From Bigelowiella natans CCMP2755 (lineage: Eukaryota > Protista > Cercozoa): a stretch of 64,000 nucleotides of DNA. Below, piece after piece: positions 1 to 61,560 of the stretch. Made by a program: the position numbers and the translations under genes. Location: NCBI GenBank assembly GCA_000320545.1, contig ADNK01002290.1, forward strand, positions 198,345-262,344, written 5' to 3'. The notes beneath the pieces were generated by a model. It did not search any database, had not been told where the DNA came from, and saw nothing but the letters and a program-made list of their open reading frames with translations. Position 1 is the stretch's first letter. The number at the start of each line of letters is the position of its first letter.

Positions 1-1091
1 GGGTGGGATTTTCCACCCGCGAAGCTTGCACACTCAAACAGCATTCGCACCAAACTTGGAAAAAAGAAATTGAAAGCAAGTCCGTGTTTGGAGTGTCTGA
101 AGTGCGGGAAAAGCAAAGGTGGTCATTGGAATTTCAAGGTGCAGGGAACAAACGGAGGACTTCGTGCATGCTTGGGAGGAGCACCATCCCGAGGATTGGA
201 ACACCTCATTGGAAGTGGACCGCGCGTTCATCAGGGCACTCACGTTGCGAACCTGATGCGTTGAGGGCGGAAGCTCCGTGGATGGGACAAGTGCACCGCG
301 GCAAGCAAAACGTTCCACGGGACTCTCTGATGTCGGCAGAATGCACAAACGAAGATGAGGCCATGATGAAAGTTGGCCAAACGCAGTCATTTGAACTCAC
401 TGAAGGTGATGCCCCCCCACGGTGTGCACCTGGTGCCCCAAAACTCGACCAGCAAAAAAAAAGAGGAGGCGAATTGGTGTTCAAGGAAGGAAAAGATGGG
501 AAAAAAATGCCTGTCATGGAGAAGGAGGGCTGGCTAGGAAAGGCTGAAGGGAGAAAACAAACTTCACGGGAAAGGGGACTGTGGAAAGAAGGCACGACAG
601 CAGACGGAAGATCATCGAAGTGGGCAGGCGAGCGTGAAGACACGAGTGCTGCAAAAACGCTCGCAAAGTGCAGAGACTTTGCGAGTGAAGAATCAGCATT
701 GAAAAAATTCTTTGAAGAACACGGACATGCATTGGTCATGAGTCCGAAGGGCCACTCTGAAGTGGCTGGATCAGGAACAGAACGTTCCTGGGGAAAGACC
801 AAACGTGACCGGCGGAGGATGCCCATTGAGCAACGCACAAGTTCTCGCTTCTGCCAGGACTTGAACAAGCTGTTCCACAAGAACTCCCCACCTTTGGAGA
901 GAACGTGGAAGTGTGCACGTGAGGCAAGAGACTGTCGCCGCACGTGTCAAAAACTGGCAGAAGAGAAACCTTTGGAAAAGAGTGAATTGCACGAAATGGA
1001 AAGGATGATGGCCGAACAAAAATGCCATCGGTCTGTCCTGAGTTCCCACGTGTCACACTTGCGAAATGCACAAATTGACAACGTGACGTGA
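1..1091 (+). mobile_element. Degenerate IS630/Tc1-mariner-like DDE transposase relic (5' part outside window, frameshifted, hypermutated)
   Basis: Motifs across frames: LKCGKSKGGHWN (family YGK..GYW), D.SSGHS, GKAEGRKQTSRERGLW (KGLKQ.L.ERGL), CRDFASEESAL, GHALVMSPKGHSEVAGSGTERSWGKTKR (GH....PK.H.E..IEY.WG..K), RDCRRTC. No Tyr in the 362-aa ORF. Confidence 0.75.
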
Positions 1092-1390
1092 CGTGTGAAA
1101 ACACGTGCACATGGCACAGCACTTGTGTCCTCTTGTGTCGCCAAAAATCCTCTTGAGCGTGCTTGGATGGTCGAACTCACGCCCCAAAAAAACAAATGGA
1201 ATGGCCTGCCAATCGCACCCACCTGCTTCGTGGCATCCCCTCTTCAAGCTCCGCCCTGATGTGGGCTCTGCGATGGATGATGCCGCCCAACGATGCGTCA
1301 CACACACACGAAAGGACGAAGTTTGAGTCCATTTTCAAAAATCCCCTGCAATCGATGCGTTTTTTTTTTTTTTGAAGTTGGGATTTTTTT
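1..1390. other. TpA-depleted block 1
   Basis: Manual scan finds one TA dinucleotide in 1-1390, inside CTAG at 534-537. Confidence 0.9.
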
Positions 1391-1963
1391 GCTACATGCA
1401 AACATTTAGTGCAAATGGAACACAAATGTCATGTGTTTGTGTCTTCGTCAAGTTGACATGACGTGAATTTGCAGGGTGCGACTTGCAATCAAATGCTTTC
1501 TTTCTCGGCTATTCATTTGCTTTTTGGTGTGTCGCTGTTTGACAACTTTTCGATCGAACCACCCTACAGGTAGTAGGACATTAGGTCAATACCCTAGTCA
1601 TCTAAATACAGTGTTCACAATCACGTTGTCGCCACATGAAAGTGAAGTCATCATTAGCACAGATCGGGTTGTGAATTTTATCGTGCGACAATAACAAATG
1701 GGTGAAATCGCCAGTATGAAATCCCAGAGTCGGAACGTAGGAAAGAGACAGCTCCGAAAGGCAATGTATTTACAGATGCAGATCACGATTGCGTTTTGTG
1801 TTGTTTGCGGGGATGTGAGTAGCGTGCGCATGCAGCGATAGCAACAACTGATTTGATTAGACTAATATACTCACATGTTCAATCATATTGAGACTGCGGT
1901 TTGTTGTTCCATACTGTGCGTAGACACACAAAGCCCGTTGAGGACAACATAACTTAGCTCACG

Positions 1964-3794
1964 ATGAAATTCGGAAAGAAGCTGTGTAAGTACATGCAGT
2001 TGAATGAGGACTCCGCAAACATGCTAATAAACTACAAGTCCCTGAAGAAAGCCATAAAAGAGATGCAGGCGGGGGACAAATCCGAGACTGATCGTGAGGA
2101 GAAGGAAATATATTTCGGCCACCTGCTGCTCAGTGAGATCAAGAGAGTCGACGCAAACTTTCATCAGACAATTTCTTCACTGGCTCAAAAGAAATCGGCA
2201 ATAAACCCTCCATCAGACGAAGGCAAAGATGTGTCCTCGGATGACGAACAGCTTGATCAGAGTGCAAAACAGCTAACGAACTACGCGCACCTCAACACTG
2301 AAGCCGTTCGTAAAATAGTAAAAAAGTTCAAGAAGAAAGTCCTGGAGGAACCGTCACCAAGGATCGAAGCGAAGCTCAGCAATAACGTATTGGCCCCTGA
2401 TATGAAGCTGTCCAGCCCTGGCAGCCCATCCGCGTTGGATCGAATAATCAATCGCGCGCGTGAAAGGTCCTATTTCTCAAAAGCAGCATCAACAATACGA
2501 TATAGACCCAGGATCGATAGAGAGGCGAGCACAGCGTTGTTGCCCGCACAGTCGACAGTAGATAAAAATGGGGGATTCACTGGGGGACAAACAGTATCCA
2601 TTCGGCCGTCAGCTTTGGCATATACAAAGGTTGGGATTAGCTTCTCGCTGTTGATGGTTATGATTTACCAGTTAAGTATTGACCTGGGTGTCAATGGAGA
2701 ATATGACTCACTCGGCCAAATTGAGAGCTATGCGGTATTTCGCTCGCTCGGCCTGTTATGTCTCTTGGGCTTTTTTTGGACGATTACTCGCATCATCTGG
2801 AAGCTCTCAAGAGTTGGTATATTACTTCACTTTGGTATAATATGATCTGTTCTTCGCTGACGTTCTCCGTACTCATTCTTGTTCAGATGAAGAGGAGATC
2901 ATAGTGTGCGCATGGACTGAGACTCCTGCGCACACAATTGAGTGGTGGCTCAGCATGTTCATCACCTTCGCTTTGACGTTTGTGTTGTATCTGTCTGCCT
3001 CCCACTGGTCCGTTGGCAACAAGCACTTGCACATCTTTCCTCTCGTTCTATTATTGCTGTTCTCCATCGTCGGACTCTCGCCTTATCGGAGATTCAGGTT
3101 CTATAATATGGCAGGATTGAGCATATTTGAATGTGGTCTCATGCTGCCCGGATTCCATGCAAACCCTTTCAGGAACACGCTAGGCTACCTTCAAAGAGTA
3201 TTCCTATCTCCATTTAGGTCGTATTCAAGTATCACATTTGTTGCTATGGGTGCATGGCCAAAATTGTACTCTGAACATATATGGTGAAAGTCTCTATGAT
3301 CTTTGTGGGATGATGTTCTCTCTTAACGCTCGAATATGATTCTTCTCTTGTGGTCACAGCGAACCTTCGTTTACAGCGGTCCTCGTGGCCGATGTCATGA
3401 CCAGCCTTTCACCAATATTCGCGGATCTTGTTTTCACTTCGTGTTACTACGGGAGTAGCATGTTCCAGCTAAATTTTCCTTCATCTCGAAGGAATATCTG
3501 TTGGCGCTCCAGATTTGGGATAAGAGGTGTAGTTATGGTGATTCCCTTGTGGCTTCGATTGGCTCAATGTTTCAGGGGCTACTACGATGCAGGAGAGATA
3601 AAAAGCCTCCTGAATGCTGGTAAGAGGCGTTGTTAGGGGCACAAGATCATCACTATGCTCATCTCTCATAACGATTCAGGCAAATACTCCTCGTCCATCC
3701 TGGTGGTTGCACTAGGGGCTTTCCTAGACAAGGAAAAGTCAGCCCCTATTCGGATCACGGCTGCTATATTTAAGTGCGTGTGCTTGTCTATCGC

Positions 3795-4559: not shown

Positions 4560-6300
4560 TGAATTTCATTGTCATTTGCATTGCATTGTTGCAATCTAGC
4601 AATCATAACAGCCACATGCTAGCATGGCCGGACGTCTCTAGATTTTGCCAATCATTTGTTTGCCGCACGCAACGCGTTGCGCTCATGCATTCTTCATCTC
4701 TTAGTCATTCATTCAGGCATTCAGTTGCATTGTCTGACAGCATGCAGATGATGCAGCCTAGCTTGGCATGAATCTGAGGCCGTGCGCGGGTTGTTGCTTC
4801 ACTGCAGTAGGCAGAAGAGCTGTGACTTGGGGCATTGACAAGTTTGTTGCCACGCCGTGTTTCAATGGTTTTTCAAAGAATCAAACGACAAATCCATTGA
4901 ACAAAAAAAAACGCAAAAAAGAGCTTGAACAACAAACACTTAACGATCACCATGTGAACGAACGCTTCGGCGTGAAAAGTGTGTGTTGCTAGTGTTGTTG
5001 TGTGTGCAGTGTGTGCGTTTCCAAGCAAAAAGTGTGGCGCGCAGCGCCCTGTCTCCAGCCTCCAGCCTCACACACACAGCGTGCGCAGCCCGCAACTTTT
5101 TCAGGGGCCATTGCAACCTCTGTGCGCAGTTGAACAGGGGTCATTGATGAGCTCTGTTGCGCATTGACGGAGGCCAGTGGAGCGCGAACAGAGGTCACCG
5201 TGGCCCATCCTCCGTTTGCCAAGCGGTGTGCCAAGGACATTCGACCCTGGAGTCTTTGTGTGCAAAGGAGAAACCGGCATCTGCATCATCAGATCATGGA
5301 TCGACGACCTCATTGTTGTTTGCGACAACCCCAAGTTGCGAGAGAGACTTGTCTCTGCTCTCAATGCCAAGTTCGGCGCAAAGGATCTGGGTGGACGAAC
5401 CAAGCTTGGTGTTCAGGGATGCAAGTTCGAAAGACAAAGAAGGTGATTGTTGCTTGTTGAACCAACAACCGCTCATCGAGCGTTTGGTCAATGACTTTGT
5501 GGAAGACGGTGAGAAGCACTGTTCACTGCCAATGGATCCTCGGATGAAACTGTGTTCTGCAGGACATGCCAGCATGGGGACATTGCGCGCGCGCGTGTGT
5601 GTGTGTGTGTCATGTGACACGTGTGCCACGCTGAAAGACATGGATCATCTCCTTCCATGCAAGAAGTGTGAACATCAACAGCTCAGATCAAAAAACCAAT
5701 TGACGGCCATGATGAATCGCAATGCGACGAAACGAAGCGTCTGACAATGACAGAACACGAGAAAAAAGGGCTCGCATCGCTGCACGCACTGCGCGCACCG
5801 CCCGACGACATCGACGACATCGACGGCAGGACAGCAATGCTTTCAAATGCATGCAACGTCTGATGCAAGAAACAAATGGACTTGACCCAAGCGCCATGGC
5901 TGCTGCTCCGCACAGCTCCATTGGGATGACCATTGAAAATTTTTGATCATTTCATTGCACCCGTCTTGCACATCTAGGCATGCTAGCATGTGCAGATTTG
6001 TGTGTGTGTGTGTGTGTGTGCACATGCATGTGCATAATGGACATCACATTGCTGTTGCTGTGTCCATTGTCCTGTGTGACATGGGACATGCGAACACGGC
6101 CATAGACGGTGGCGCCTTGCCCAGTTATTAGAGCACATTGACGATGCATGACAATGGACATGCATGCACATGATGTGCACTGTGTCCATGGTGCGAGGCA
6201 ACATGTGATGCTCTAGATGCTGTGATTTCACCCCATGAATTCATTTCACACAAGGAGCCAAGGAAAGCCTAATCCATGCTGGCCACATCTAGATGTTTGG
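4560..6300. other. TpA-depleted block 2 (between convergent genes)
   Basis: No TA between CTAG 4989-4992 and CTAG 5974-5977 by manual scan. Surviving TAs on the flanks are mostly CTAG/TAG. Confidence 0.9.
5240..5552 (+). mobile_element. Ty1/copia reverse transcriptase (RVT_2) relic, frameshifted
   Basis: FDPGVFVCK...IIRSWIDDLIV...LNAKFGAKDLG then LNQQPLIERLVNDF...PMDPRMKL. This matches the copia order DPC.Y...YVDD...F..KDLG...L.Q..YI..L...F...PM. Confidence 0.8.
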
Positions 6301-6317
6301 GCGATTATCAACTGCAT

Positions 6318-9300
6318 TTAGATGCGCTTGAATGACAGCACAGCTAGAAATCCACATTGTAATGGCCTGAGGGGATGAAGCATTCTCCTAGCATGAGGGT
6401 TTAGAAACTTAGTCAGTTTGAATCCTGCTATGGGGTCTACTTTGGATCTTTGACAGATGAATCCCAAACTATCACCAGCTTTAGCACAATGTATAGAGAA
6501 TGAAACTGTGCGCAAAGAGTTGTGACAAATTTTGCATTCACCTGGTTCAAGAATTGGCCAATCAAAATCGTAGTCAATGGGAGTTAGAATGCTTTCTAAA
6601 CTTCGGTCGTCATCTTCGCAGTATCTAATGTTGGCAAGATCCTCATCTCTATCAAGAGCAGCAGCCCCGAATAAAAATTCGCGGATTGTTTTGGCTTTCA
6701 ACAGCAAAACTTTCTTCTGGATAAATTTTTGGAAACTTTCTGTCATCTTGCATTTGCAGGACACCGAAGCAATTAGAATTTCAGAGAGCTTTAAAAAGGT
6801 TTGTCCAGGAGTGTCGGAATCATCAAGCTCGTGTTGCACATGCGGAAGAATCTTGGTGAGGTTCTAGATTAGACAGGATTTTCCATTCGATGTTGTAATC
6901 AGTGTAAATATGCAATGTATGTGAATAAGGATCAAGTCAGAAATCTTCTAAATTTTTTGTAAACCTTGCCACATTCTGCCTTCATCATAGAAGAAACCTC
7001 TTCGATGAGCACCTGGAATGCATGATCGCCATAAATCATTGGCGATACTGAAATATGAGAATCCAAAATGAGTGCTTTAGTGGAGCGAATCTCGTTCGTT
7101 GACCCTCCATCATCTTTCAACTTCGGCGAGAAGCTAACATACGCAGCAATCTGAAACAACAATCTAAGTGAGGTAAAGGAAGTATTCTTTGAAATATGTA
7201 TAATTAGGCATAGGTACAACTATTTTAGTACATCAACCCTAATGAAGCTCTCAAATCTATATTTAAGATCTTTTATCCAATGATCAATTCCATGTTGAAG
7301 CCGATCGACCTCACTAGAGTCAAATTCACTTTCAGAATCATATTCATCGCTACTTCCGTAGATATATTGATCATCCAGGACGCACTGTACCCATTGCGCG
7401 GCAACTTCATCGTCATCTATATTTTCAGGAACATCATTTAAAAACCCTAAAATCTCACATCGATTGCGGACTTCTTTACAAATTTTTTTCCCGAGAATTT
7501 GAAGAATATGCTTAGCCACTTTAAAAACTAAAGGCAAGTATTCCTTGTTCCCACAGCATATAAGGTAATAACAAAGACTTTCAATGCCATATGAATGAGT
7601 TCCAACATCCAAGTGTGATCCTTTCTCTCTGTACGACCTCAAAGTGACGTGGAGCATGTGCTTCGCAAACTTCACATCATTTTTGTCGATGACAATTTTA
7701 GCAAGAAGTTCCCAGGTTTTTGACGGTCGCATATATGAAGAGAACACAGAGCTGCTTAATTCCATCCTAGATGCTTGTTGTCCCCTTTCTAAGAGCCAAC
7801 CCTTTAGTTGGGATTCGATAGATTGCTTATCATCATTTGTGCAACAAAATCGAAGGGCCTGTGTTGGAAAGAAACATGCCGACGTAAATTTGCAGGGAAA
7901 TATAGTTCTTGTTTTTGCATCAATGCCCAGTCCAATGTTTAATGTTCAAAGTATCGATTACTTTCTCATAAAGAAACACGGTGGGAGCCCGCATGAAACG
8001 AGCTACAATCTTAGTGCAAAAGATATGCTTCAAGTCTGAAGAAAGTACGCTGCCGTTGTCCGTTCTTATAGCGTTGAATCCTTTCCCGTCGAAATCTATC
8101 TGCTTATATCATCTTTATCAATATGACTAATAGACTGAGCAGTATGATGTAATCTTTACCTTCTCAGCCAAAGATACCCAATTAGACAGTTTCTCGGGGG
8201 AGAGTACGATCTCAGCAAGGTTGAGTATCAATATCCAGCTACTCCAAACCTCGAGAGATGAAGTGAGAAGCAGTGAGAAAAATGGGAAGGAAGGAAAAAC
8301 AACTACGGAAAAATCAATTATTGCTTCTCTAACTGAGGGCACACACATGAGGGTATCATACTTGTTGCCAAATTGGATTCCGTTTGCAGCCATCGAAACT
8401 AAAATTTGGATCATGATAGTTTATAATCCATTGCTTGGAGTGCCCTAACGAAGTAAATTACAGGGTATTAAAATGAAATAGACGACTCTCAATTGTGGAT
8501 TTGGCTTGTTTTAACAAGAATCTAAAGATCTAAAGATTAGCACCGTTTAGGACACTTAGTTCGTTGTGCAATGTTTCCATAACAAAGAGATGATACTCGA
8601 CCATATTTTCATCTAGAATGAGGTAGAATCATTTATTGCAAAGGTAGATGCGTTTTCCTCGCAATTATTAGTTAATCATATAAGCGTACGAAACCTCGGT
8701 CATCTTTCCTTGTTTGCTCTTCACAGAAAATTTTAATGTGCTCCAAAAGTTTAAGTATTTCGTCGCATAGATTGAACATAATCTGATGTTCCATCTTGGG
8801 GTTCATTTTGAGATTCTTTTGTAGACTGAGATGAATTAAATTTCAGCCCCAAGTTTCGACGCAACATTTGTTCTAAATGTAAGAATGTGTACCGTATAAA
8901 TAACTCCGTGACGATACTTTTTAGGTTCTGATCGGATTGTTTCCTGTACACAATTTTCCTTATCCTTTTTCGATTCCCTTCTTTCTTGAGAATTGAAAGA
9001 TTTAAAGGTATTTCGTTATCCCCTTGATCTAAATTCTCATTACGTCTGGCTTTAGCGGCTTGAGCATATGCTCTTGTGTTTGTGTGACAACAAAATGAAT
9101 GAGAGAAAGCCCAGCAGATTGTATACAAGAGAAATGAAAGGAAAAAGGAGGATTTTCTCCAAATGACAAATGACATCAAGACATGAAGAGCTGCATGTAG
9201 ATGCAGTAGATACTTGTTACCCACAGAGTGGTGTCACGTATGTAAAAGGATCATGAAATCATGAAATGAACACATATAAAATGGAAATGAAAACATTCAC

Positions 9301-9887
9301 GAAACAACTAAAGGAAAGATGTAGAAGCCAAAAGCAAGGACATGGATGTAGATAACCTCGCAGCTTCTTCGGCTACCGCAAAATAACCCAGGTAGTAACT
9401 GTGATTTCGCAATTTATCATTCTTCATTGAAAGTGTCAAAACAAAGTAGACCAAAATTCACATGAATACATCCATTGAATAGCTCAAAAAATTCTATTTG
9501 ACATTTAACATTTGTTAAATAGACCTTTTTCCTTTGATCACGATTTTAGCTCCGAATTTTCTATATTGTTTTTTGTAATAAACACCGAGGTACTAGATGT
9601 CAACAAATTCCATGTCAGAATGATCAGAAACAACATCAACACAACGAACAGATGTACGATGTACACGCTGGAACCTTAGCTGCAAGAGCTCTTTCTTCCT
9701 CAATGTTCATCACATTTTCCTTAGGTTTCATTTTTTCCATTAGATGCTTTGGCTGGGGCATTGATTGATTTGGAGTTTGAATGGGAATTGTAGTAGATTC
9801 CATGACACCAACAACGAGTGTTCGCGTTGACAAAAACGGTGGCAAAAGTGTCTGAATTTTGTTGTTTTTCCTTGTCGTAACTGCCAT
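6318..9887 (-). CDS. AP2-domain DNA-binding protein with long uncharacterised C-terminus, multi-exon
   Basis: Splicing small exons (ending 9675, about 9592-9525, about 9398-9357, from about 9072) gives AAK|YLGVYYKKQYRKFGAKIVIKGKS|YYLGYFAVAEEAAR|AYAQAA, the AP2 signature with consistent phases. ORFs 7220-7765, 6932-7219 and 6318-6839 link by GT-AG introns. Start uncertain. Confidence 0.75.
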
Positions 9888-9889
9888 TC

Positions 9890-11170
9890 AGGACGTGTCA
9901 ATTTTTCGAGAAGAAACGTCTTCGCGGGGATTCACATCAATCAATCAATCGTTCCATCTTTGGAATTTCTTGCAGTGCACGTCAGTTGGTGCCAGTTCAA
10001 GCTCCCACTTCATTCATTCATTGAAGCATCCTCGCATTGCGGTGTCTGTGGATGGACACTTGCGAATTGTGCCTCGCATCCATTGGTTGGTGAGATGCCA
10101 TCAAGTGAAGGCGGGCATCGGAGAATTGATCTCACTCTTCCTGTTCAGACCACCTTCTCCATTGGATGGGTGAGGAGCGAAGATCTCGATCTCAGTTGCT
10201 CACTTTTTGCACGACGTTCGTTTTGGTTTGTGAATTTGAATCGCTCATTTTTGGTTGTCGCACGCCCAAGATGAACAAGATCCACGCATGCACTGGTTTT
10301 TTGTCGTCACGGCCGGCAACTGAATTGTGTCCATTTTCACCCTTTTGTTCAGATGTTGCGGCTGGTGCGAGCATCCTCATCCGGCAAACGCGGGCTCAAT
10401 GGCGGCTCCATCAAAGACGTTCTTCGCGCCGTGAACGACGAGGTAGTGGAACCGTTGGGTGTTGGGCAAGAAACACAGAATGTGTTGCAGGGCAGGCGCA
10501 GTGGCGCACCAGTCCAAGGAAGGAAGGCCTACTTCGAGGTGATCGGCCTCGACAGGACAAGAACGTGCAAGGCCAGATTGCAATGATTGCATCGGAGAAA
10601 GATCTGATGAATGAGAGAATTGACTGGCTTTTCTGTTCCAGGACCAATGTTTCGACTCGTGCGAATGATCATCAGAGGCTGTGAAAGAAAAAGCAGCTTC
10701 AATGTGGTGCGGGTCACATGGCCATCCATTTGTCCATTCAAACTGCTGCGCGCACGTCACAGCTGAATGACCACCGCTGTGTTGTGTGCGTGCTGAACAC
10801 CTGCACCACAGCTTGCTAGCTTGACAGCTAGACAGCACTGGCTCCAAACCTGCAATTTGTGAGAATTTTTGTGCAATTAGCCAGTCCTGCATGCTGCATG
10901 GCATGCCTAGATGCGTGCACAGCGCACGCGCGAAACATGTGTAACCGCACAGACACAGTGCACATTGTGTGCATTGCACGTGTAATCACTCCTTGCACAC
11001 TTTGGCACGCTAGCACGACAGTGCCTGCTCCAGTGCTGTGGTTGAAAACACATTGCACTCGTGGAAATCTCAGTTGCGCAAATGTGCACAGTGCTGAACT
11101 TTTGTTGTTTTGTGCACGTTTTCCAGAACTTGTCGATGCTTCAGTGCATTGAGTTGTTCGCAGCACAACT
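9890..11170. other. TpA-depleted block 3 (unidentified decayed sequence)
   Basis: About ten TAs in about 1.3 kb, half in CTAG (10816, 10828, 10907, 11010, 11169). Overlapping ORFs on both strands, consistent with loss of TAA/TAG. Confidence 0.85.
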
Positions 11171-33579: not shown

Positions 33580-34304
33580 AGCAAGCTGGCATATCTAGTA
33601 TATGTGTGTGCATATCCACATATGTGAGCATTGTAGTAACTTAGCTAATTCGAAATGTTCTTCACGTAATAGCGTACAGGCGTGTTACTCGAGTTGGCCA
33701 TGCTAGCATGATAGAAGTGCATATGCTCAGTGCATATACTAGACATATGATGCTAATAGTGTACGGTATAGTGTTGCTATCCGTAGATGTCGCAGCTATA
33801 CAGTATAGCTAGCAGTAGTTTCCTAGAATCACAATGCGCGACTATTGCTGACACATAGCAAGATGTAGACCACAGTAGAGTGCGCACGTACATCTAGACA
33901 TGCGCATGACACCTACTCCAAACGAGTGCTGTGTATAGAAATGCACAACACGCGTGCATATTGATCATTGTCTATAGCTTGATAGCCGTACGGACAAAAT
34001 TGTTATTAGCATTGCTAGATTGAAGTATGTTTACATGTGTATGTGTGTAAATGTTCTTTTTTTAATTAATAATGCTTCTCGTACGACGTCTAGACGTACA
34101 CGGGGAAGCCCTAAAGTAATGTGGGATCTATGTGCTGCCCCCCCGTGTTAACTCTTAGGAGTGTTCAGGGTGACGAGAAGGTGTCTAATGGCTATAATAT
34201 TGATGACTGATACAATGAGTATCCAGATACCAGTGTGTAAAACACATATGCCGGCGGTGTTTTGCATGATACGATCTCATTTGATGTTAAACTGCATTTC
34301 AGCA

Positions 34305-60059: not shown

Positions 60060-61560
60060 CGCACATGTAACATGACAGCATGTGCGCTAGCTAGTCTAGT
60101 AGTCTAGTAGTGCGTGCTAGCGTGTGGTGCGATGCGATTTGATGACACGATGTGCGATGCGTGCTGCGCATGTCACATGCGTGGCATGGCCGGCGGTGCG
60201 TCTGCAAGTGCGACCAAGCACACATCTAGACATGCTTGCATCGCACATTCCAGCACAGTGTTGTGTTGATGAACGAATGCTGTTCTGGAGATGCACGCAT
60301 GCACACGCGCTGCTGCACGACAATGGACACAGTGATGTCATGCACATTGTCAACATGCAGACACAGTGATGTCATGCACAACATGCATGTGGTGTCACAT
60401 GTCCATGATCACGATGCGATGATCTAGCTAGCTAGCCAATGATGATGCGCATTTGCTGTCTGTGCATGCTTGACGACAGCAAGCTAGCAAGCAGCAGAGT
60501 GGGCCAACACATTCATGGATGCAGCAGTTGTCCCGCCCACCAGCCAACTTTGCTGGTTTGCGGCACCAACACGCACTGGAACACACTCAACGGGGTCGCT
60601 TTGGTCTTGGCAAAAGAAAGCCCTGCTAGCCTGCGCTTGCTAGCTTGCTGCGCTCGAGCTCCTTCCATTGGTTGTTGGCTGATGGGTTCAAGTTGAACCA
60701 CAAACGGACACGCATGATTCTCGCTTGTCGATGCAGCACCACACGTGCAAATGCCTCTTGAGCTCTTGAGGAACAGAACAACAAACTTTCGCTCACTTTG
60801 ACAACATCACAATGAGTGCACACCACACGAAAGGAGATGGAGGAGGACGAGAAGAACAAGACGAAGAAGAAGAACAAGAAGAAAAAGAAGAAGGAAGGAA
60901 AAGAAGAAGGAAGGAAAAGGAGGTGAGAGAAGCCAGAGGGTCTCGCGTCGGTCGTGGAGAGTTGTCCAATTGTGCCCAGAACGAACGTTGCTTCGTCTTT
61001 CACACTCGATCAAGATGCACACTTGTGCTGCAAACGATTTGAACGCGCCTGAAACAACAAACAGCATGAATGATTGAATGAACGATGGAGCCGGCACACA
61101 GGCTCAAGAAACAAGAAATACCTGATTGTGGAAAGAGTGAAAAAAACTTTGATGATGCTGACTGCACTTCCAAAGTGTCACGTGACACTTGCCAGCTTGC
61201 AAAGTGCGCACAGAAACACAGTGCCTCGAGCTGAAAACAACAAAAACTTTCTGGTGTGAACACCAGCCATGAACAATGAACAATGATGACAAAACACACT
61301 TGCAAAATGTTGCAAACAAGACACTGGCAGTGTGCGAAACGCAGTGCCTCGAACAATGAACAACAACGATGATGAACCATGCACGTGTGGCGCGTGCGCA
61401 TCACACGTGTCACATTGATTAGACTGACTTTGGTGAGGTCTCACTGGTGAAACCTGAAGGAATCAAAAATGACATTCAGGACAGAGAGATCTCCTTCTAG
61501 GACTAGGGGATCTTCTTCTCCGATCCCTCACGAACAAACGTGATGTGGAACTAGCAGCGT
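60060..61560. other. TpA-depleted block 4 with CTAG clusters and a degenerate (GAA)n tract (about 60830-60930)
   Basis: Surviving TAs are almost all CTAG (e.g. GCTAGCTAGTCTAGTAGTCTAG about 60086, CTAGCTAGCTAG 60424, 60626, 60640, 61497, 61504, 61551). Confidence 0.9.

What the first reader, a model, noticed from the sequence alone, without database searches (positions are those of the whole stretch)
1..1390. Candidate repeat-directed A-to-G hypermutation ('reverse RIP'): TpA erased from a DNA-transposon relic
Seen: one TA in 1390 bp (in CTAG), whereas the neighbouring genes and introns are full of TA. The transposase has no Tyr, and conserved positions read as TA to TG/CA/CG products: YGK to CGK, GYW to GHW (CAT), GIEYSWG to GTERSWG (ACA, CGT at 777-785), RDYRRTY to RDCRRTC. 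Both TG and CA products occur, so both strands are hit. The victim is a DNA transposon, which argues for a DNA-level process rather than RNA editing. Established: fungal RIP and 5mC decay give C-to-T and create TpA, the opposite direction. TadA-derived DNA adenine deaminases prefer TA. Inference: a host defence or chromatin-linked adenine deamination or modified-adenine decay system. Ancestral residues come from my recollection of family motifs. A few changes are T-to-C outside TA, so the bias may be broader.
Basis: partly seen in the sequence, partly recalled or inferred. Interest (0 to 1): 0.92.

Follow-up and report, generated by a model that had tools for sequence, protein, structure and literature searches.

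The report
TpA-erased transposon relic, known mutator

Summary
Window 1-1390 has one TA against about 80 expected. The erased tract is really 3.0 kb (window -1605 to 1392), with 16 TA against 168 expected, all in CTAG, GTAG or CTAC. It holds a degraded DDE-type transposase whose homologues elsewhere have normal tyrosine content. At the 10 conserved Tyr columns the two local copies never read Tyr, mostly Cys or His.

The direction is shown by two copies of one Copia element in this genome, 95% identical. 248 of their 249 differences fit TpA to TpG/CpA, split equally between strands, with no transversions and no strand runs.

This is the TpA-specific hypermutation of Bigelowiella natans reported by Mettrop et al. 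(bioRxiv 2026, 10.64898/2026.01.13.699255). This scan has also noted it many times on other DNA of the same genome.

"Repeat-directed" is not supported. At least 24 near-identical Copia copies keep normal TA, and the two sister copies differ about five-fold in damage.

The chemistry is open, because A-to-G at TpA on one strand is T-to-C at TpA on the other.

Small additions here:
- a CTAG-sparing context gradient;
- a minor ApT (CATG) channel;
- a rate check against the preprint's figures.

The parts
1..1392 (.). Right-hand 1.4 kb of a 3.0-kb TpA-erased tract (continues to window -1605, i.e. G000:C1447:196740-199736)
   Evidence: 1 TA against about 80 expected in 1-1390. The whole tract has 16 against 168, all in CTAG, GTAG or CTAC.
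1..1079 (+). Degraded DDE-type transposase remnant (family without a Pfam model). Homology starts at window -98, with a frameshift between about 135 and 204.
   Evidence: A profile of 23 outside homologues plus the two local copies matches -98..135 (frame +1, profile positions 90-166) and 204..1079 (profile positions 185-463 of 467, E 4e-93). phmmer with the sister copy's ORF found 1,293 homologues. No Pfam or PDB match. A weak language-model lead points to DDE_3.
282..1091 (+). 269-aa open frame present in public protein sets (P0019, EukProt); best read as a pseudo-ORF kept open by loss of TAA/TAG
   Evidence: P0019 is 100% identical to residues 94-362 of the 3-1091 frame. A 245-aa frame is also open on the opposite strand.
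534..537 (.). Only surviving TA of the reported interval, inside CTAG
   Evidence: CTAG is the refractory context.
1080..1308 (+). Non-coding 3' part of the element, shared with fragments on contigs C1631, C2967 and C2945
   Evidence: 79-85% DNA identity. The fragments show TG<->CA doublets, and TA where the relic has TG/CA.
1393..1964 (.). Sharp right boundary and TA-normal spacer upstream of the SPX-domain host gene (ATG at 1965)
   Evidence: TA at 1393, 1407, 1510, 1565 and onward. ORF MKFGKKL....
4809..5975 (+). Second TpA-erased tract, with a Copia reverse-transcriptase fragment at about 5237-5565
   Evidence: 985-bp TA-free gap. tblastx to a Copia element of the same genome, E 5e-17. Weak RVT_2 match, E 0.015.
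9879..10817 (.). Third TpA-erased tract, content unidentified
   Evidence: No Pfam match.
60070..61419 (.). Fourth TpA-erased tract, content unidentified
   Evidence: No Pfam match.

Best explanation
[quoted passage not shown] After insertion it was hit by the alga's TpA-specific hypermutation. At each TpA one of the two A:T pairs is changed to G:C, giving TpG or CpA. Once changed, the site is no longer a target. Hits fall independently, site by site, with equal chance on either strand, so the process acts on chromosomal DNA and not on a transcript. The rate depends on the flanking bases: WTAW is fastest, CTAC/GTAG slow and CTAG nearly immune. ApT in CATG is a roughly 20-fold weaker second target. 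Erasing TA also removes TAA and TAG stops, which leaves long false ORFs.

Shown here: the depletion, its direction, strand symmetry, context rule and sharp edges, and that copy number alone does not trigger it.

Shown by the preprint: the process runs today at about 6e-7 per site per generation in two integrated viruses.

Inferred: the chemistry. Enzymatic deamination of adenine 3' of T, by a TadA/ADAT2-like enzyme, is the leading guess. Also inferred: targeting by local chromatin state or small RNA.
For: Depletion and boundaries.

Ancestral state: 148 of the 150 best homologues have normal Tyr content (median 3.4% across the 150). The only Tyr-free one is this relic's own ORF. The 10 conserved-Tyr columns read Cys 3, His 4, Arg 1 in the sister copy and Cys 3, Arg 1, Trp 1, Glu 1 in the relic. 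Conserved Gly, Arg, Lys, Glu and His are mostly kept.

Direction and spectrum: Copia copy C1213 (12 TA) against copy C3044 (208 TA), 5,165 bp, each with its own 5-bp target-site duplication. There are 249 differences and no transversions. 196 are TpA to CA (101) or TG (95), and none became CG. 19 TG<->CA doublets mark independent hits at one ancestral TA. 14 are ApT hits and 1 is unrelated.

No strand coordination: 97 runs against 98.9 expected.

Context: survival of TA in 27 kb of tracts relative to outside is CTAG 0.53, CTAC/GTAG 0.12, CTAA/TTAG 0.08 and WTAW 0.03 or less.

Preprint: 230 of 231 mutations in the two hypermutable regions are A-to-G or T-to-C, all on TpA. It reports 124 TpA-depleted clusters, with DDE-endonuclease and reverse-transcriptase Pfams enriched.

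My arithmetic from the preprint's numbers: 211 mutations over 6,169 TA and 3,132 generations is about 1.1e-5 per TA per generation. A 94% loss therefore needs about 2.6e5 generations. In that time the background rate predicts about 0.5 other changes in 5.2 kb. One was seen.
Against: No copy of this particular transposon family with intact TA exists in the genome. For the relic itself the direction therefore rests on protein-level inference and on a few fragment comparisons (6 sites of TA against TG/CA and 6-8 doublets). No enzyme is tied to the process. The deaminase inventory found here looks ordinary: one ADAT1-like locus and six loci with TadA/CDA-type domains. I could not test whether this locus is silent or carries a chromatin mark. 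The context figures assume that the elements once used TA contexts as the rest of the genome does.
Confidence: 0.88

Rival explanations
1. Same process, different chemistry. The enzyme acts on the thymine of TpA (for example oxidation or another modification that then pairs with G) and causes T-to-C. Adenine is not deaminated.
For: TpA is self-complementary, so A-to-G at TpA on one strand is the same base-pair change as T-to-C at TpA on the other. No sequence datum here separates the two. The preprint text does not mention thymine or hydroxymethyl bases. From my own knowledge, dinoflagellate 5-hydroxymethyluracil is enriched at TpA.
Against: No Tet_JBP (PF12851) match in a six-frame search of the genome, although that test is weak in an intron-rich genome and the control genomes also gave no match. 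From general knowledge, 5hmU:A pairs are not strongly mutagenic. U33-A34 is the natural context of TadA/ADAT2, which fits T-A.
Confidence: 0.12
2. RIP-like, repeat- or homology-directed mutation: duplicated sequence is recognised as such and both copies are mutated.
For: The victims in this window are mobile-element relics. The preprint itself draws the analogy with RIP.
Against: At least 24 near-identical Copia copies with intact 1,470-1,490-aa frames keep normal TA. One has 100% identical LTRs. Sister copies C1213 and C3044 are 95% identical but were damaged very unequally. The preprint's 186-kb target is single-copy. The relic's family survives only as a few short fragments.
Confidence: 0.05
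3. ADAR-like editing of element RNA, fixed in DNA by reverse transcription.
For: ADARs favour a 5' U (cited in the preprint's discussion). One tract in the window and the test pair are retrotransposons.
Against: The relic is a DNA transposon. In the Copia pair the sense and antisense products are equal (95 against 101) with no runs. Non-element flanks inside tracts are erased too: the L042 tract of 7.5 kb spans several elements. The two LTRs of C1213 carry different post-integration ApT hits. The preprint saw the mutations arise in resident DNA.
Confidence: 0.02
4. No mutator: the elements are intrinsically TA-poor, either from foreign composition or from selection against TA or stop codons.
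For: The LTRs of a young, active-looking Copia family are TA-poor (3 against 18 expected) while its coding part is normal, so some TA-poor sequence is inherited and not acquired in place.
Against: Homologues of the transposase elsewhere have normal Tyr content. The sister copies show the conversion directly. Tract edges cut across unrelated sequence types.
Confidence: 0.02

Closest known systems
TpA-specific hypermutation of integrated viral DNA in Bigelowiella natans (Mettrop et al., bioRxiv 2026, 10.64898/2026.01.13.699255)
   Same: Same organism. Same spectrum: only TpA to TpG/CpA on both strands. Same genomic footprint: TpA depleted, CpA+TpG enriched, clustered. The paper already lists DDE endonuclease and reverse transcriptase among TpA-depleted coding sequences.
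   Different: The paper measured live mutation only in a giant-virus and a virophage insert. It gives no nucleotide-level account of transposons and does not mention flanking-base effects (no 'CTAG'). It considers only adenine deamination. This locus is an end-state relic with almost no targets left.
Repeat-induced point mutation (RIP) of fungi
   Same: A dinucleotide-specific transition hypermutation that riddles mobile DNA and inactivates it.
   Different: RIP is C-to-T (CpA to TpA), creates TpA, needs duplicated sequence and hits both copies. Here the direction is opposite, duplication is neither needed nor sufficient, and sister copies fare differently.
ADAR hyper-editing of double-stranded RNA
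   Same: A-to-G with a preference for a 5' U/T.
   Different: ADAR acts on RNA and gives strand-coordinated clusters. Here the change is in chromosomal DNA, each site is independent, and a G after the A disfavours the hit.
TadA/ADAT2 tRNA adenosine deaminases and TadA-derived DNA base editors
   Same: Their natural target A34 follows U33, so a T-A preference is expected. The preprint names an ADAT2 homologue (Bn78255) as candidate.
   Different: No link between any B. natans deaminase and the process has been shown. The deaminase loci found here look like the usual housekeeping set.
APOBEC3 hypermutation of retroviruses and retroelements
   Same: Host-driven editing that ruins invading genetic elements.
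   Different: C-to-U on single-stranded DNA during reverse transcription, with strand-coordinated runs. Here A:T changes to G:C on resident double-stranded DNA without runs.

Membership tests
B. natans TpA hypermutation footprint (Mettrop et al. 2026) | Changes are almost only A-to-G / T-to-C and fall on TpA | tested here: met
   Copia pair: 248 of 249 differences fit. 196 of 208 TpA changed to CA or TG, with no transversions. In the relic, conserved Tyr reads Cys, Arg, Trp or Glu, never Tyr.
B. natans TpA hypermutation footprint (Mettrop et al. 2026) | TpA depleted together with CpA+TpG enriched, in clusters of at least 3 kb-scale windows | tested here: met
   3.0-kb tract: TA o/e 0.10, TG 1.69, CA 1.45. 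[quoted passage not shown]
B. natans TpA hypermutation footprint (Mettrop et al. 2026) | Both strands hit | tested here: met
   CA 101 against TG 95. Tract TG 297 against CA 286.
B. natans TpA hypermutation footprint (Mettrop et al. 2026) | Same organism | tested here: inconclusive
The identification rests on earlier scan notes, the 91.4-Mb genome size and the relic's ORF being in EukProt. The footprint matches the paper's.
B. natans TpA hypermutation footprint (Mettrop et al. 2026) | Elevated present-day mutation rate at the locus | not testable with these tools
   Only one TA is left in the interval. The one reads call, on a partly mutated Copia, gave only mosaics of the two paralogues.
Fungal RIP | C-to-T at CpA, creating TpA | tested here: not met
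   Opposite direction.
Fungal RIP | Requires duplicated sequence; both copies mutated | tested here: not met
   At least 24 near-identical Copia copies are unmutated. Sister copies are unequally hit.
ADAR-type RNA hyper-editing fixed by retrotransposition | Strand-pure, clustered A-to-G on the transcribed strand | tested here: not met
   Runs test z = -0.27, equal products. The victim is a DNA transposon.
DDE_3 / Tc1-IS630-like transposases | Significant match to the Pfam model | tested here: not met
   No Pfam family for the relic, its sister ORF or six outside homologues, apart from Chromo and SAP add-ons.
DDE_3 / Tc1-IS630-like transposases | Catalytic D, D, E/D with a C-terminal P-x-x-P-[DE]-L-N-P-I-E..W-like motif | tested here: inconclusive
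   The consensus has GQDE, E.D.SSGH and PKCHPELAG.GIEY.WG..K. The resemblance is by eye, plus a 0.76 feature score to DDE_3 clusters, which is a lead only. No terminal inverted repeats were found.

The most novel reading that the evidence does not exclude
The mutator is a new kind of chromatin- or position-targeted editor of double-stranded DNA. It reads a 4-bp context (WTAW fast, CTAG nearly immune, a weak CATG side-reaction) and strikes each site and strand independently. It is switched on by where an element sits and not by what it is or how many copies exist. Two sister Copia copies with roughly one unrelated background substitution between them carry about 94% and about 20% damage, and the heavily hit one lies inside a 7.5-kb erased island. 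The enzyme could be neither ADAT2 nor an adenine deaminase at all.
Probability: 0.3. Interest if true: 0.8.

Novelty: already known. Interest (0 to 1): 0.4.

Why it matters
A natural, dinucleotide-specific A:T-to-G:C hypermutation of resident foreign DNA is the mirror image of fungal RIP. It points to an unidentified DNA editor, which bears on genome defence and possibly on base-editing tools. That discovery belongs to the 2026 preprint.

This locus adds a well-resolved transposon example and some constraints any candidate enzyme must meet:
- strict TpA dependence, with no double hits;
- no strand processivity;
- near-immunity of CTAG;
- a weak CATG side target;
- sharp tract edges a few hundred bases from a live gene;
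- independence from copy number.

It also warns annotators that TpA erasure removes two of the three stop codons and so creates false genes. The relic's 269-aa frame sits in public protein sets.

Tried and rejected
1. Ongoing mutation. I laid three DNA runs and one probable RNA run on the partly mutated Copia copy (L043:1834-6998). The DNA runs showed 38 A>G, T>C and similar 'variants' that differed between runs. All 38 equal the base of the paralogous C1213 copy. They are therefore contig mosaics of the two paralogues, not new mutations. No conclusion on present activity is possible from them.
2. Naming the transposase. No Pfam match, no PDB sequence match and no source names. The only pointer is a weak DDE_3 lead. 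No terminal inverted repeats at the tract ends.
3. Thymine-oxidising enzyme. No PF12851 match, but the test is weak.
4. Unusual deaminases. One ADAT1-like locus, and six loci with TadA/CDA-type domains that read as dCMP deaminase, ADAT3-like, TadA-like and two guanine-deaminase-like paralogues. Nothing stands out and nothing is linked to the process.
5. A simple one-neighbour rate model ('G after the A blocks it'). At CTAA/CTAT and GTAA/GTAT the two strands' products differ only about 2:1. That is too little to explain the near-immunity of CTAG, so both flanks seem to act together.
6. None of 208 TpA became CG. TAT to TGT to CGT through the ApT side channel fits better.
7. The remaining tracts. 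The other two tracts of the window and the 1-kb part left of the transposase gave no protein match.

Full report
**Observation.**
- Window 1-1390 contains a single TA, at 535 inside CTAG. Base composition predicts about 80, and the window's own background (TA o/e 0.74) predicts 59, so P(<=1) is about 1e-24.
- The window is G000:C1447:198345-262344. Reading leftwards, the tract runs from window -1605 to 1392.
- These 2,997 bp hold 16 TA against 168 expected, with TG 297 (o/e 1.69), CA 286 (1.45) and AT 0.82.
- All 16 survivors sit in CTAG (10), GTAG (4) or CTAC (2).
- The right edge is sharp. TA reappears at 1393 and 1407 and is dense from 1510, about 570 bp upstream of a TA-normal SPX-domain gene.
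- Three more erased tracts lie in the window, at 4809-5975, 9879-10817 and 60070-61419.
- The first of these holds a Copia reverse-transcriptase fragment.

**What the relic is.**
- The 362-aa open frame (3-1091) has no Pfam match.
- A better-preserved sister copy on contig C1213 (L008:925-2592, also TA-poor) found 1,293 homologues in a full HMMER scan, 62 of them below 1e-30.
- These homologues come from metagenome assemblies and carry no names. Some carry Chromo or SAP domains. The core has no Pfam model and no solved structure.
- A weak language-model lead points to DDE_3. That fits the Tc1/IS630-like look of the motif PKCHPELAG.GIEY.WG..K. I do not file the family there.
- A profile of the family maps to window -98..135 in one frame and 204..1079 in another (E 4e-93). 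The gene is therefore frameshifted and truncated.
- The frame stays open only because TAA and TAG have been erased. A 245-aa frame is open on the opposite strand too.
- Residues 94-362 are nevertheless present as a 269-aa protein in public sets.

**Was TA lost, or never there?**
- At the 10 columns where outside homologues conserve Tyr, the sister copy has Cys 3, His 4, Arg 1. The relic has Cys 3, Arg 1, Trp 1, Glu 1. Neither ever has Tyr. Conserved Gly, Arg, Lys, Glu and His are mostly kept.
- Of the 150 best homologues, 148 have ordinary Tyr content (median 3.4% across the 150). The only Tyr-free one is this relic's own ORF.
- Short DNA fragments of the family elsewhere in the genome show TA where the relic has TG/CA (6 sites), and TG<->CA doublets.

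**A natural experiment.**
- The genome holds two full copies of one Copia LTR element, each with its own 5-bp target-site duplication: C1213 (L042:1588-6751) and C3044 (L043:1834-6998, reverse).
- They are 95.2% identical over 5,165 bp, yet have 12 and 208 TA.
- Of the 249 differences none is a transversion. 196 are TpA in C3044 against CA (101) or TG (95) in C1213, and no TpA became CG.
- 19 TG<->CA doublets mark independent hits on one ancestral TpA in both copies.
- 14 differences are A-to-G or T-to-C at ApT, half of them in CATG. Only one difference is unrelated.
- The order of TG and CA products along the element is random: 97 runs against 98.9 expected, with no distance effect.
- The process therefore acts on resident duplex DNA, one site and one strand at a time. 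It stops at a site once the TpA is gone.
- The two LTRs of C1213 differ only by two different hits on the same CATG. That places these hits after integration.

**Context rule.**
- I defined tracts only by total TA count, which gave 27 kb in the window and fetched loci. I then compared TA survival inside tracts with outside.
- Survival is CTAG 0.53, CTAC/GTAG 0.12, CTAA/TTAG 0.08, GTAC 0.06, TTAA 0.04, and 0-0.03 for the remaining four contexts, all with an A or T on at least one flank.
- Product ratios at half-protected sites are only about 2:1. A single-neighbour rule therefore does not explain CTAG, and both flanks seem to count.
- Other agents of this scan reached the CTAG rule on other DNA of this genome. 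The preprint does not mention it.

**Already known.**
- Earlier scan notes name the organism as Bigelowiella natans.
- Mettrop et al. (bioRxiv, version of April 2026, 10.64898/2026.01.13.699255) ran a mutation-accumulation experiment. 231 of 302 nuclear point mutations fell in an integrated giant virus and a virophage. Of those 231, 230 were A-to-G or T-to-C, all on TpA, at about 6e-7 per site per generation.
- They also report 124 TpA-depleted, CpA+TpG-enriched clusters and 324 low-TpA coding sequences enriched for DDE endonuclease and reverse transcriptase. They propose an ADAT2-like adenine deaminase.
- This locus is a member of that class.
- My arithmetic from their figures gives about 1.1e-5 per TpA per generation. 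Loss of 94% of TpA then needs about 2.6e5 generations. In that time the background rate predicts about half a substitution in 5.2 kb, and one was seen. The measured rate is sufficient to explain the footprint.

- 'Repeat-directed' is not supported. A young Copia family has at least 24 near-identical copies with intact 1,470-1,490-aa frames, and one copy has 100% identical LTRs.
- That family has normal TA: o/e 1.02-1.14 over the pol C-terminal stretch of 24 copies, and 0.82-0.83 over the whole internal region of two full copies.
- The sister copies above were hit very unequally. The heavily hit one lies inside a 7.5-kb erased island that spans several unrelated relics. The preprint's main target is single-copy.
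- Position or chromatin state therefore looks more decisive than repetition, although a difference in age cannot be excluded.
- 'A-to-G' is a convention. Because TpA is its own complement, T-to-C at TpA on the other strand is the same event. A thymine-directed chemistry therefore remains a rival that no sequence analysis can exclude. A Tet_JBP search found nothing, but the test is weak.

**Dead ends.**
- The single reads call, on the partly mutated Copia, showed run-specific A>G and T>C differences.
- All 38 equal the paralogue's base, so they are contig mosaics.
- The same call shows that a probable RNA assembly covers that copy without a single difference and with one 198-nt GT..AG skip. The partly mutated copy therefore seems to be transcribed.
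- The deaminase inventory is unremarkable.

**Verdict.** It is wrong or unproven on repeat dependence and chemistry. The phenomenon is already published as a preprint and has been noted many times in this scan. Interest is moderate, for the added constraints only.

Noticed in passing
L046:1414-1781 and 8140-8507 (G000:C2164); also L045: A young Copia family (at least 24 copies; 100% identical LTRs in this copy) has LTRs built largely of heat-shock-element-like arrays (alternating GAA and TTC blocks, each separated by two bases). The LTRs have only 3 TA against 18 expected, all three preceded by C (CTAC, CTAG, CTAA), while the internal region is TA-normal. Either the LTR lineage passed through the mutator and survived, or it is intrinsically TA-poor.
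   Followed up: partly
L043:2031-6936 (G000:C3044): A probable RNA assembly (run X1) covers the partly mutated Copia copy with no differences. It shows a 198-nt skip with GT..AG ends at 6379-6578, read on the strand opposite to the Copia ORF. This is a possible spliced antisense transcript over the element's 5' part.
   Followed up: no
window 4615-4626, 5979-5990, 33699-33710; also twice in L044:6502-6539: The 12-base palindrome CATGCTAGCATG occurs 3 times exactly and 2 more times with one mismatch, against 0.27 expected. Two copies bracket the second erased tract. It also occurs in TA-normal DNA, so it is not simply a tract marker. Other scan notes speak of CTAG-containing insertion scars.
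   Followed up: partly
window 206-943 (-), 3-1091 (+); L042/L008: Erasing TpA removes TAA and TAG, so tracts carry long open frames on both strands (245 aa antisense here; 1,590 aa in the erased Copia). At least one is in public protein sets as a gene product (P0019).
   Followed up: yes
L042:1588-6751 within L042:146-7962 (G000:C1213): The fully erased Copia copy is inserted, with an intact 5-bp duplication CCACT, next to or into a second relic of the same DDE transposon family as the reported one. The whole 7.5-kb nest is erased as one island.
   Followed up: partly
L051:1369-1842 (G000:C980) and L052:1444-1863 (G000:C3623): Two paralogous open frames with a guanine-deaminase/TadA-like zinc-deaminase domain (HAE ... 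CEPCPMC). Their function is unassigned and no link to the mutator was shown.
   Followed up: no
window 1965-2830: An SPX-domain membrane protein gene starts 570 bp from the erased tract and has normal TA, so the mutator's edge lies within the gene's upstream region.
   Followed up: no
window 5588-5612, 5995-6022; L008:2200-2330: (GT)n/(CA)n and (GC)n microsatellites are frequent inside erased tracts. One interrupts the sister transposase ORF. They may be former TA-rich simple repeats converted by the mutator.
   Followed up: no
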